Counted from the first letter of the whole stretch, positions 12,018-13,127 are shown. The stretch: DNA of 63,046 nt, filler included, from Octopus bimaculoides (GCF_001194135.2; 8 parts of 8 records of this genome joined end to end with filler, not necessarily neighbours in it), one strand, 5' to 3'. The notes: a model not told the origin generated them from the sequence alone. Numbers and translations are program-made.

Positions 12018-13127
12018 AGCAAGTTGTATAGATATTCCGCTATAGAGGACTGAGATGGCTAACACAATATGCAATGATGTGTTAAATGTTGCAATCATTA
12101 TTTCTTTTTCGTTGACGTCCTCTTGAAATGCGATAACGATCAACATACACGAGAAAATAATAGCGAACATGAAGATGATGATTGCATAGATGGAGAAGTT
12201 GGCATTGACTTGATGTAGTAGCTCCATTATTTCTTCGTATTTCTTCTGAATGTGAACCAATTTATTGTTAATGTCGCTAGTTGATTGTTCTTCCTCGTGG
12301 AGCAGCTTCAGTTTTTGTGAAAGGGCATGCAGCTCACAACAAATTACTTTCGCAAAGAAATAAAGTAGTATATCGTCGCTGAGTATTCCAGATGCGACAA
12401 ACCAGCTTAAAATCCCGAAGTTTATACTTTCAAAAGTTTTATTCTTCCACATAGGTATACCTAGTAAAGATTTCACGGGAGATGGTTCAAATTTAACATT
12501 ATAGGAAGAAATTACGATCCATATTATACTAACGATGATTATAATAACCGAAAATCCTACCATCAATTTAATATGCAGTTTTACTTTCCTCAAATATTTT
12601 TGCTCTCTTAGAGAAACAACACATGCTGAAAATTTCTCAAGCAATTTTCTGCCGTATACGACGTTGGTGATGATCTTCATTCCATGCTTAAAAACATCCA
12701 AAGAATAAAACAGCAGGAAATAGGAAAAGACAATAACTTTTCCTCTGCCCATCCAATGATAAAATGAAAAATATAAGCGTATTATATTCCAAATAAGAAA
12801 CAATGAAACGATACTTTTGAAAACTATGAACAAATTCTTTTGGCGTTTTGTGAGATAACCAGGTGGGTACAAATCTTGACCAGAGAGCGCCGTAAGATGT
12901 AGTGCAGGTTTTAAAATATCTATCGGAATTTCTTCACTTGAATCTTTTATTGGTCGCCTATGGTCCATGTTGGTGGATTTACTGCATGTAGATACATCAG
13001 TACTAGAGATGACAAAAGGTGTTACATTATTACTTTGGTTCTTTGATTCGTTTTCTGGTATAATTGCTACGCCAGAACTTGAGAGAGGATTCTTTCCCTT
13101 ACCAAACGTCAAGTGATTGTCTACCAT
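12018..13127 (-). CDS. Gustatory-receptor-like (Grl / 7TM ion channel superfamily) gene, large first coding exon (TM1-TM6); 3' exon(s) with TM7 not located
   Basis: 370 uninterrupted, non-repetitive codons. Hydrophilic N-tail, then ILKPALHLTALSG (Gr/Grl-type N-terminal P-xx-hydrophobic-G motif) and six hydrophobic segments (LFIVFKSIVSLFLIWNII; VIVFSYFLLFYSLDVF; LMVGFSVIIIIVSIIWIVI; FGILSWFVASGILSDDILLYFFAKVICC; FSIYAIIIFMFAIIFSCMLIVIAF; IMIATFNTSLHIVLAISVLYSGISI). The amphipathic loop KKYEEIMELLHQVNANFS before TM5 is typical of Grs. The frame ends GCT|GTATGT (phase-0 donor at 12017), so the ORF-track VC* ending is probably intronic read-through. Confidence 0.75.

What the first reader, a model, noticed from the sequence alone, without database searches (positions are those of the whole stretch)
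12018..13127. Candidate cephalopod gustatory-receptor-like (Grl / 7TM ion channel) chemoreceptor gene
Seen: the only long non-repetitive ORF in 63 kb, 370 codons, with six hydrophobic helices, an N-terminal LKPALHLTALSG motif and a YEEIMELLHQVNANFS amphipathic loop. Known: insect Gr/Or proteins and their animal Grl homologues are ligand-gated 7TM ion channels with this layout, whereas characterised octopus contact chemosensation relies on Cys-loop chemotactile receptors and ionotropic receptors. Inference: this is a divergent Grl/7TMIC channel that could represent a separate, little-studied chemosensory or developmental channel system in a cephalopod-type genome.
Basis: partly seen in the sequence, partly recalled or inferred. 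Interest (0 to 1): 0.8.

Follow-up and report, generated by a model that had tools for sequence, protein, structure and literature searches.

The report
Octopus gustatory-receptor-like gene, variable first exon

Summary
The ORF is confirmed on the minus strand at window 13127..12009 (372 codons to the stop). It has 370 coding codons up to a GT donor at 12018/12017. It is 100% identical to residues 1-370 of Octopus bimaculoides LOC106874590 isoform X2 (464 aa).

The exon alone falls below the Pfam 7tm_7 threshold (16.8 bits against 26.6). The spliced protein passes it (48.5 bits, E=1e-12). AlphaFold models of two isoforms are low-confidence (pLDDT 57, pTM 0.59), but both match only insect Orco/OR/Gr cryo-EM structures in the PDB (top 22 hits, TM 0.56-0.71). 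GPCRs score at noise level.

The gene has four large alternative first exons about 10 kb apart, each encoding TM1-TM6. Three small shared exons, separated by phase-0 introns, encode TM7 and the C-terminus. Drosophila Gr39a has the same layout, and so does a cuttlefish homologue.

Compared with O. sinensis, the exon core has diverged more than its flanks (87% against 92-93% identity). It has no indels or stops. dN/dS is about 0.8, with 19 nonsynonymous and 0 synonymous changes in extracellular loop 2.

This is a new, unstudied member of a known family. Channel function and a chemosensory role are inferred, not shown.

The parts
12018..13127 (-). Coding part of the alternative first exon 'X2' of the O. 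bimaculoides GRL gene LOC106874590: 370 codons, encoding an N-terminal tail plus TM1-TM6
   Evidence: ORF. 100% identity to residues 1-370/371 of P0001. Equals L001 10001-11110.
12012..12017 (-). 5' splice donor GTATGT directly after codon 370 (phase-0 intron). The in-frame TGA at 12011..12009 is intronic.
   Evidence: Sequence. The protein continues with VEEP..., encoded 14 kb downstream at ttcag|GTTGAAGAA. Homologous genomic ORFs of other octopods also read through into '...AVC'.
12966..12968 (-). Conserved Met54 (MDHRRP), the likely ancestral or alternative start codon. Codons 1-53 are not conserved as coding sequence between species.
   Evidence: The paralogous exon X4 and the O. sinensis orthologue carry stops or frame-breaking indels (7, 9 and 11 nt) upstream of this Met but none downstream. 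Residues 1-65 have pLDDT below 50.
12879..12914 (-). LKPALHLTALSG motif (residues 72-83), at the N-terminal edge of the 7tm_7 domain just before TM1
   Evidence: In sister isoforms the 7tm_7 alignment starts at residues 73-74, profile position 1-2. The motif is conserved in octopods and recognisable in cuttlefish as LTPVLWLTFFSG and LKPILRSKIFSG.
12771..12839 (-). TM1 (residues 97-119)
   Evidence: Hydropathy peak and AlphaFold helix 94-125
12669..12737 (-). TM2 (residues 131-153)
   Evidence: AlphaFold helix 131-170. Followed by a K/R-rich loop with 8 K+R in 32 residues.
12504..12572 (-). TM3 (residues 186-208)
   Evidence: Hydropathy 3.07; AlphaFold helix 176-210
12420..12497 (-). Extracellular loop 2 (residues 211-236, with an NKT sequon at 229), the fastest-evolving segment
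   Evidence: 19 nonsynonymous and 0 synonymous differences to the O. sinensis orthologue. pLDDT below 50 for residues 211-226.
12351..12419 (-). TM4 (residues 237-259), including the nearly invariant SWFxASGILSD stretch
12192..12239 (-). YEEIMELLHQVNANFS (residues 297-312): predicted as the cytoplasmic helical extension that runs into TM5, not a loop
   Evidence: AlphaFold helix 283-333, pLDDT about 75. Y297 and L303 are invariant across octopus and cuttlefish homologues.
12123..12191 (-). TM5 (residues 313-335)
   Evidence: Hydropathy 3.15; AlphaFold helix 283-333
12024..12101 (-). TM6 (residues 343-368). The exon ends two codons later.

Best explanation
Window 13127..12018 (minus strand) is one of four tandem, mutually alternative large first exons of a single Octopus bimaculoides gene of the gustatory-receptor-like (GRL) branch of the insect Gr/Or '7TM ion channel' superfamily. 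The following is shown. The exon encodes a poorly conserved N-terminal tail and transmembrane helices 1-6. It is spliced through a phase-0 donor to three small shared exons (24, 29 and 41 codons, all joined by phase-0 introns). These lie 14-20 kb downstream, outside the piece, and encode the cytoplasmic part after TM6, TM7 with the motif SYGVIVFQT, and a short C-terminal tail. The following is inferred from the solved insect Orco/OR/Gr structures. The protein assembles as a tetrameric ligand-gated cation channel. The variable exon (TM1-6 and the extracellular loops) forms the ligand-binding module, and the constant exons supply the pore helix and part of the cytoplasmic anchor that holds the subunits together. 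First-exon choice would then give four receptors with different specificities and one common pore, and these could co-assemble if made in the same cell. The fast, indel-free evolution of the exon, concentrated in extracellular loop 2, fits a receptor whose ligand-facing surface is being retuned. My confidence is about 0.93 that this is a GRL/7TMIC variable exon. It is about 0.6 that the product is a ligand-gated cation channel, and about 0.4 that its role is chemosensory rather than light, temperature, internal-metabolite or developmental sensing.
For: Identity: 100% match to RefSeq isoform X2 of LOC106874590. Family: Pfam 7tm_7 at 48.5 bits, E=1e-12, above the 26.6 cutoff for the spliced protein; 33-58 bits for the other full-length isoforms of this gene and its O. 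sinensis/O. vulgaris orthologue; 81.9 bits plus Trehalose_recp at 29.2 bits for the cuttlefish homologue. Fold: Foldseek top 22 PDB hits for two isoform models are all Orco/OR/Gr43a/Gr64a/BmGr9 (best E 8.7e-6 and 1.4e-5, TM 0.56-0.71), followed by unrelated folds from E=0.18 (X2 model) or 0.83 (X1 model). Gene structure: four first exons at L003 10037, 20706, 30291 and 40030, then shared exons with canonical AG/GT sites and phase 0. The nearly gap-free O. sinensis locus has no constant exons between its variable exons, so the layout is not an assembly-gap artefact. A gap-free cuttlefish locus has the same layout of one large and three small exons, and two proteins there share one C-terminus. 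The layout matches Drosophila Gr39a: four large exons each encoding six TMs, plus three small exons for TM7 (PMC2204066). GRL criteria from PMC7746228: 464 aa; seven TMs; intracellular loops of 32/53/48 residues against extracellular loops of 11/28/7; TM7 motif matched at 3 of 4 positions. Maintenance: the 951-nt core has no indels and no stops against O. sinensis, while the flanks carry 4-6 indels per 0.9 kb. The chance of no stop under neutrality is 0.003-0.04. Channel architecture of Grs/ORs: PMC11526382 and PMC7746228.
Against: The exon alone is below the Pfam threshold (16.8 bits). Sequence and profile searches against PDB sequences find no Gr/Or. Both AlphaFold models are low-confidence (pLDDT 57, pTM 0.59), and the TM7 region is below or near pLDDT 50, so the pore region is not modelled reliably. 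The alignment behind the models has only 15-19 cephalopod sequences. dN/dS against O. sinensis is 0.79-0.87, and the bootstrap interval 0.51-1.31 includes 1, so relaxed constraint cannot be excluded. No transcript, splice-junction or expression evidence was available; isoform X2 is a computational model. The last position of the TM7 motif is Thr, not F/L/M, and in Orco that position is part of the gate. Topology evidence is weak: K+R is 15 inside against 8 outside, and N-glycosylation sequons occur in both the C-tail and the N-tail.
Confidence: 0.85

Rival explanations
1. The X2 exon is a decaying or unused pseudo-exon. The gene is a real GRL, but this particular cassette is no longer spliced in or no longer under protein-level selection.
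For: dN/dS against the O. sinensis orthologue is 0.87 overall and 0.79 in the core, with a bootstrap interval of 0.51-1.31. The exon has diverged more than its non-coding flanks (87% against 92-93% identity). The ancestral start region is disrupted in related cassettes: stops in Ob_X4 and Os_a, and a frame break in Os_b. Drosophila Gr39a/Gr28b loci do carry pseudo-exons (PMC2204066). No expression data are available.
Against: There are 370 stop-free codons and an intact GTATGT donor. The 951-nt core has no indels against O. sinensis, while the flanks have 4-6 indels per 0.9 kb and the unconstrained N-tail has three frame-breaking indels in 186 columns. The simulated chance of staying stop-free under neutral change is 0.04 for one lineage and 0.003 for the whole path. 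TM1, TM4-5 and TM6 show dN/dS of 0.34-0.58, while the excess is concentrated in extracellular loop 2 (19:0), which looks like retuning rather than uniform decay.
Confidence: 0.1
2. A genuine GRL/7TMIC protein whose role is not external chemosensation: for example light or temperature sensing, internal metabolite sensing, or a developmental role.
For: Family members have such roles. Gr28b(D) is thermosensitive, and GRs contribute to CO2 and temperature sensing (PMC11526382). A cnidarian GRL is reported to act in body patterning (PMC7746228). Octopods have only this one locus detectable by sequence (7 hits in 1.84 billion representatives, all cephalopod), unlike the large expansions typical of taste receptor repertoires.
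Against: Cassette diversification of the ligand-binding half and fast change in an extracellular loop are what is expected of receptors that track external ligands. None of this is decisive.
Confidence: 0.35
3. A G-protein-coupled receptor or another unrelated multi-pass membrane protein that merely resembles a 7TM chemoreceptor.
For: Seven hydrophobic helices are generic. One orthologue gives a weak hit to a nematode serpentine receptor family (Srz, E=0.16). The ORF gives a hit to T2SSF at E=0.99.
Against: Those hits are far below their cutoffs, while 7tm_7 passes its cutoff. GPCR structures appear only at E>1.6 and TM 0.13 in the fold search, against TM 0.56-0.71 for Orco/OR/Gr. Long intracellular and short extracellular loops, the TM7 motif and the 3' intron pattern are GRL traits.
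Confidence: 0.02

Closest known systems
Drosophila Gr39a (also Gr28b and Gr23a): alternatively spliced gustatory receptor loci
   Same: Several large tandem first exons each encode six TM domains. Any one of them is joined to three small shared exons that encode TM7 and the C-terminus (PMC2204066). The octopus locus has four such large exons and three small shared exons. Exon duplication, loss and degradation between species occurs in both: O. sinensis has two X2-type exons.
   Different: Sequence identity to insect Grs is only about 10-15% in structural alignments. The cassettes are about 10 kb apart, much further than in the compact fly locus. The arrangement probably arose independently by duplication of the first exon on a shared ancestral intron scaffold. 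No expression or function is known for the octopus gene.
Animal gustatory-receptor-like (GRL) proteins / Pfam 7tm_7 (PF08395), as defined by Robertson 2015 and Benton et al. 2020
   Same: Length, seven TMs, intracellular loops longer than extracellular loops, the TM7 motif (T/S)Yhhhhh(Q/K/E)(F/L/M) matched at S430, Y431 and Q437, introns near the 3' end, and a significant 7tm_7 score.
   Different: The last motif position is Thr in both octopus and cuttlefish instead of F/L/M. phmmer finds no relative outside cephalopods, so this is a very divergent, lineage-restricted branch. There is one locus per octopod genome rather than a gene family expansion.
Solved insect 7TM ion channels: Orco (6C70), MhOR5 (7LID), AaegOR10 (8V00), Gr43a (8JM9), Gr64a (8ZE0), BmGr9 (8VC2)
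   Same: They are the best and only significant structural matches, over about 400 aligned residues, with TM-score 0.56-0.71 normalised to the target.
   Different: The rmsd is 5-8 Å and the octopus models are low-confidence, especially at TM7. Ligand, stoichiometry and gating are unknown for the octopus protein.
Octopus chemotactile receptors (CRs, nicotinic-receptor-derived) and ionotropic receptors
   Same: They are also candidate sensory ion channels of cephalopods. CRs are the characterised contact chemoreceptors (PMC11526382).
   Different: The fold and family are unrelated (pentameric Cys-loop or iGluR-like against tetrameric 7TMIC). O. bimaculoides has up to 26 CR genes against one GRL locus with four cassettes.

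Membership tests
Pfam 7tm_7 (PF08395) / animal Gr-GRL family | Significant profile match above the curated gathering score | tested here: met
   Spliced isoform X2: 48.5 bits, E=1e-12, cutoff 26.6, profile positions 97-367 of 370. X3: 57.7 bits. X1: 48.5 bits over profile positions 2-367. The window ORF alone scores only 16.8 bits, E=0.0044, because TM7 is on other exons.
Pfam 7tm_7 (PF08395) / animal Gr-GRL family | Length of about 350-500 aa with seven predicted TM helices (criteria ii and iii of PMC7746228) | tested here: met
   464 aa, or 411 aa from Met54. Six hydrophobic helices in the exon plus TM7 at 417-437 in the shared exons.
Pfam 7tm_7 (PF08395) / animal Gr-GRL family | Intracellular N-terminus (topology inverted relative to GPCRs) | tested here: inconclusive
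   K+R within 15 residues of the membrane: 15 on the presumed inside against 8 outside (29 against 8 over all residues). Three N-X-S/T sequons lie in the presumed extracellular C-tail and one in EL2, but three also lie in the N-tail. No dedicated topology predictor was available. The orientation is otherwise inferred from homology.
Pfam 7tm_7 (PF08395) / animal Gr-GRL family | Intracellular loops longer than extracellular loops | tested here: met
   IL1/IL2/IL3 are 32/53/48 residues; EL1/EL2/EL3 are 11/28/7 residues.
Pfam 7tm_7 (PF08395) / animal Gr-GRL family | TM7 motif (T/S)Yhhhhh(Q/K/E)(F/L/M) | tested here: inconclusive
   S430-Y431-GVIVF-Q437-T438: three of four defining positions match, and the last is Thr. 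The cuttlefish homologue has TYVVVVIQT. PMC7746228 calls the motif 'diagnostic, but not definitive'. The motif lies in the last shared exon, outside the window.
Pfam 7tm_7 (PF08395) / animal Gr-GRL family | [quoted passage not shown] | tested here: inconclusive
   Three phase-0 introns lie in the last 94 codons, and the last exon starts 6 codons before the SY of the motif. The same three-small-exon pattern occurs in cuttlefish and is described for Drosophila Gr39a. I did not align the intron positions residue by residue with reference GRL genes. That the positions are the ancestral ones is recalled from Robertson 2003/2015, not tested.
7TM ion channel (7TMIC) fold: Orco/OR/Gr | Structural similarity to solved family members and to no other fold | tested here: met
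   For two isoform models, Foldseek ranks 1-22 are all Orco/OR/Gr (E 9e-6 to 1e-3 for 43 of the 44 hits, one Orco-complex chain at E=0.22; TM 0.56-0.71). The next unrelated hits are at E=0.18 and 0.83, with TM at or below 0.2. Caveat: model pLDDT is 57 and pTM 0.59.
7TM ion channel (7TMIC) fold: Orco/OR/Gr | Tetrameric assembly and ligand-gated cation conductance | not testable with these tools
   Requires heterologous expression with electrophysiology, or cryo-EM.
G-protein-coupled receptors | GPCR profile or fold match | tested here: not met
   No GPCR Pfam family near its cutoff (best is Srz, E=0.16, in one orthologue). GPCR structures appear only at E>1.6 and TM 0.13.

The most novel reading that the evidence does not exclude
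Coleoid cephalopods keep one very divergent GRL locus that works as a cassette receptor. Promoter or first-exon choice selects one of several fast-evolving ligand-binding modules (TM1-6, with positive selection on extracellular loop 2). Each module is joined to a single invariant pore/anchor module with an unusual polar Thr at the gate position. This layout has been kept since before the split of octopuses from cuttlefish, and it gives octopus a third ionotropic chemosensory system beside the chemotactile receptors and the IRs.
Probability: 0.25. Interest if true: 0.6.

Novelty: new member of a known kind. Interest (0 to 1): 0.4.

Why it matters
Octopus contact chemosensation is currently explained by nicotinic-receptor-derived chemotactile receptors. 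No paper in the searched library describes a cephalopod member of the insect-type Gr/GRL channel family, although GRLs are known from other molluscs. This locus is a concrete, testable candidate for another sensory channel, with four receptor variants made from one gene. It also shows that the 'many ligand-binding exons, one pore exon set' design known from Drosophila Gr39a/Gr28b exists in a distant phylum, on what appears to be the same 3' intron scaffold. That bears on how receptor repertoires diversify without gene duplication. The practical value is modest. The gene model and its Pfam assignment are already public, and nothing here shows expression or function.

Tried and rejected
(1) Direct sequence (phmmer) and profile (hmmsearch with alignment A2) searches against PDB sequences gave no Gr/Or hits, only noise. 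The relationship is visible only through Pfam's broad profile and through fold comparison.

(2) I looked for wider relatives. phmmer against 1.84 billion representatives gave 7 hits, all cephalopod. Two profile searches of the word-indexed database added only an Argonauta fragment. I could not place the clade among other molluscan GRLs.

(3) I looked for the shared 3' exons inside the piece. They are absent, and they lie beyond the piece's low-coordinate edge.

(4) An assembly-gap artefact, with each large exon being its own gene and its 3' exons hidden in N runs, is rejected. The O. sinensis and cuttlefish loci are essentially gap-free and show one shared set of 3' exons.

(5) Gene conversion from paralogous cassettes, as the cause of the exon diverging more than its flanks, is not supported. 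Differences are spread evenly and fall on both lineages, 52 against 68.

(6) SINE-mediated duplication of the cassette is not supported. The two flanking SINE heads are found only around this cassette, not around the others.

(7) Rfam and tRNA scans of the piece found nothing.

(8) Literature searches for cephalopod GRLs or for the gene identifiers found nothing specific. One search was wasted on a badly chosen term setting.

(9) A first brute-force splice reconstruction failed because my search window missed one donor. The boundaries were then read directly.

Full report
OBSERVATION. The piece (window 8393-18271) contains one long ORF, on the minus strand, from 13127 to 12009 (372 aa). Every other ORF of 60 aa or more is at most 157 aa, runs through the N gap at 9687-10095, or consists mostly of simple repeats. 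After codon 370 the sequence reads GCT|GTATGTTGA, a canonical splice donor, and the last two ORF codons and the stop are intron read-through. Both quoted motifs are present, at residues 72-83 and 297-312. Hydropathy analysis and the AlphaFold helices place six membrane helices in the exon. From base composition, 370 consecutive stop-free codons have a probability of about 2e-12.

IDENTITY. The translation is 100% identical to residues 1-370/371 of 'uncharacterized protein LOC106874590 isoform X2' of Octopus bimaculoides (464 aa, P0001). The piece corresponds to CM046608.1, bounded by assembly gaps. The remaining 94 residues are not encoded in the piece.

FAMILY. The ORF alone gives only a sub-threshold Pfam 7tm_7 hit (16.8 bits, E=0.0044, cutoff 26.6), covering profile positions 97-291 of 370. 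It stops short of TM7. The spliced protein passes clearly, at 48.5 bits and E=1e-12 over profile positions 97-367. Sister isoforms score 48.5-57.7 bits and align from profile position 1-2, which begins at the LKPxLHxTALSG motif. A cuttlefish (Acanthosepion pharaonis) homologue scores 81.9 bits and also passes Trehalose_recp. No other Pfam family comes near its cutoff.

Searches of PDB sequences with the protein or with a family profile find nothing, so the relationship to solved structures is beyond plain sequence comparison.

AlphaFold2 models of isoform X2 (15-sequence alignment) and isoform X1 (19 sequences) are of low to moderate confidence: mean pLDDT 57.6 and 57.0, pTM 0.59 for both. The N-terminal 65 residues and the TM7/C-terminal region are poorly defined. 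Even so, Foldseek against the PDB returns only insect Orco, OR, Gr43a, Gr64a and BmGr9 cryo-EM structures as ranks 1-22 for both models. E-values run from 9e-6 to 1e-3 for 43 of the 44 hits, with one Orco-complex chain at E=0.22. About 400 residues align, with TM-score 0.56-0.71. Unrelated folds follow from E=0.18 (X2 model) or 0.83 (X1 model), with TM at or below 0.2. GPCRs appear only at E>1.6 with TM 0.13.

GRL CRITERIA. PMC7746228 lists the following criteria:
- Length of about 350-500 aa: met (464 aa).
- Seven TMs: met.
- Intracellular loops longer than extracellular loops: met (32/53/48 against 11/28/7 residues).
- Intracellular N-terminus: only consistent. K+R near the membrane is 15 inside against 8 outside, and the C-tail has three N-glycosylation sequons, but so does the N-tail.
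- TM7 motif (T/S)Yhhhhh(Q/K/E)(F/L/M): S430-Y431-GVIVF-Q437-T438, so three of four positions match. The last is Thr, as it is in cuttlefish (TYVVVVIQT). [quoted passage not shown]
- Introns near the 3' end: three phase-0 introns lie within the last 94 codons, the last one six codons before the motif.

GENE ARCHITECTURE. The full O. bimaculoides locus (L003) has four large first exons at about 10-kb spacing (L003 10037-11125, 20706-21824, 30291-31403 which is this ORF, and 40030-41070). They are 53-61% identical to one another at the protein level. Three small shared exons follow (24, 29 and 41 codons) with canonical AG/GT sites, all in phase 0.

RefSeq models join each large exon to the same three small exons.

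The O. sinensis locus has a single 100-N gap. It shows two X2-type exons and then one set of shared exons, so the layout is not produced by assembly gaps.

A gap-free cuttlefish locus has the same layout of one large and three small exons. Two cuttlefish proteins with different N-terminal parts share an identical C-terminus. The arrangement therefore exists on both sides of the octopod-decapodiform split.

EVOLUTION OF THIS CASSETTE. I compared it with its O. sinensis counterpart.
- The 951-nt core (Met54 to the donor) is 87.1% identical, with no indels and no stops.
- About 0.9 kb of upstream and of intronic flank is 92-93% identical, with 4-6 indels each.
- The region of codons 1-53 has three frame-breaking indels. 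Related cassettes carry stops there. The conserved Met54 (MDHRRP) is therefore a plausible true start, and the N-tail is unconstrained.
- Nei-Gojobori dN/dS is 0.87 overall and 0.79 for the core, with a bootstrap interval of 0.51-1.31.
- dN/dS is 0.34-0.58 over TM1, TM4-5 and TM6, but there are 19 nonsynonymous and 0 synonymous changes in extracellular loop 2.
- Changes are spread along the exon and fall on both lineages, with no sign of a conversion tract.
- Under neutral change the exon would stay stop-free with probability 0.04 (one lineage) to 0.003 (the whole path).

Together this indicates a maintained reading frame with fast amino-acid change. That fits a receptor surface being retuned. 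With only two species, however, I cannot separate positive selection from relaxed constraint.

MECHANISM (inferred). By analogy with the solved tetrameric Orco/OR/Gr channels, TM1-6 and the extracellular loops of the variable exon would form the ligand pocket. The shared exons would supply the cytoplasmic continuation of TM6, the TM7 pore helix and part of the subunit interface. First-exon choice would give four receptors with one common pore. Co-expressed isoforms could co-assemble. None of this has been tested. No expression data were available, and the family also includes light, temperature and developmental functions.

RIVALS. A decaying pseudo-exon (about 0.1) is argued against by frame integrity, but it is not excluded. 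A non-chemosensory role for a real GRL (about 0.35, compatible with the family assignment) remains open. A GPCR or other fold is effectively refuted.

NOVELTY. GRLs are known in molluscs (PMC7746228). This gene model and its 7tm_7 assignment are already in public databases: UniProt auto-names isoform X1 'Odorant receptor' and the cuttlefish protein 'Gustatory receptor'. I found no paper on cephalopod GRLs or on this gene in the held library, and that library is incomplete. I rate it a new, uncharacterised member of a known kind. Three points give it moderate interest: the Gr39a-like cassette layout shared by octopus and cuttlefish, the single-locus state in octopods, and the Thr at the gate position. 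Interest is 0.4.

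Noticed in passing
window 11123-11215 and 14073-14165 (+ strand): Two 93-nt direct copies, 96% identical and 2950 nt apart, of a tRNA-like SINE head (GGCCCAGTGGTTAGGG...GGTTTCGATTCCC, i.e. box A/box B-like). They bracket the exon, one in the intron 0.8 kb past the donor and one 0.95 kb upstream of the ATG. A third copy lies elsewhere in the locus (L001 36583-36668). ARAGORN and Rfam do not call them tRNAs.
   Followed up: partly
window 9687-10095: A 409-N assembly gap inside the piece, flanked by (CA)n/(TG)n and by a purine-rich simple repeat (it reads as poly-Arg on + and poly-Ser/Pro on -, about 10200-10300). 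The long 'ORFs' listed there are artefacts of the N run.
   Followed up: yes
window 10500-11040, 15490-15590, 15975-16150, 17740-17955: Extensive imperfect (CA)n/(CATA)n microsatellite tracts, some in inverted orientation to each other (15990-16147 against 17753-17910). They account for most of the other ORFs of 60 aa or more.
   Followed up: no
L002 (O. sinensis CM016866.1) 3205-4293 and 9902-10735: O. sinensis has two X2-type cassettes where O. bimaculoides has one. Their upstream regions are 98.6% identical. The exons differ with dN/dS of about 2, based on few changes. The second copy has a disrupted N-terminal part and is annotated from an internal Met, without TM1.
   Followed up: partly
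L002 41554-61454 (- strand) and 67860-68021: A TIR-domain gene (594 aa) lies on the opposite strand, inside the very long intron that some O. sinensis models use to reach an alternative last exon 45 kb downstream. That exon gives a different C-terminal tail (…GQYVSGDKEYDRECYGW…).
   Followed up: no
P0011 (Argonauta hians, 492 aa): The gene model fuses a LINE-type endonuclease/reverse-transcriptase fragment to the GRL constant exons (…LTAAKMFNIDASTIIMICGTLLSYGVIVFQT…). This is probably a mis-annotation, but it shows the constant region is conserved across Octopoda.
   Followed up: partly
L004 (Acanthosepion pharaonis CAHIKZ030002108.1) 10001-10945, 25746-25820, 38183-38296, 43754-43858: The cuttlefish GRL locus has the same layout of one large and three small exons, with much longer introns (15, 12 and 5 kb). 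At least one further alternative first exon lies upstream of the fetched region.
   Followed up: partly
window 12018-13127 against its flanks: Both synonymous (0.155-0.17) and nonsynonymous (0.134) divergence in the exon exceed the divergence of the adjacent non-coding DNA (about 0.08) between O. bimaculoides and O. sinensis. Either the flanks are constrained, for example as cassette promoter or splicing elements, or the exon mutates or evolves unusually fast. This is unexplained.
   Followed up: partly
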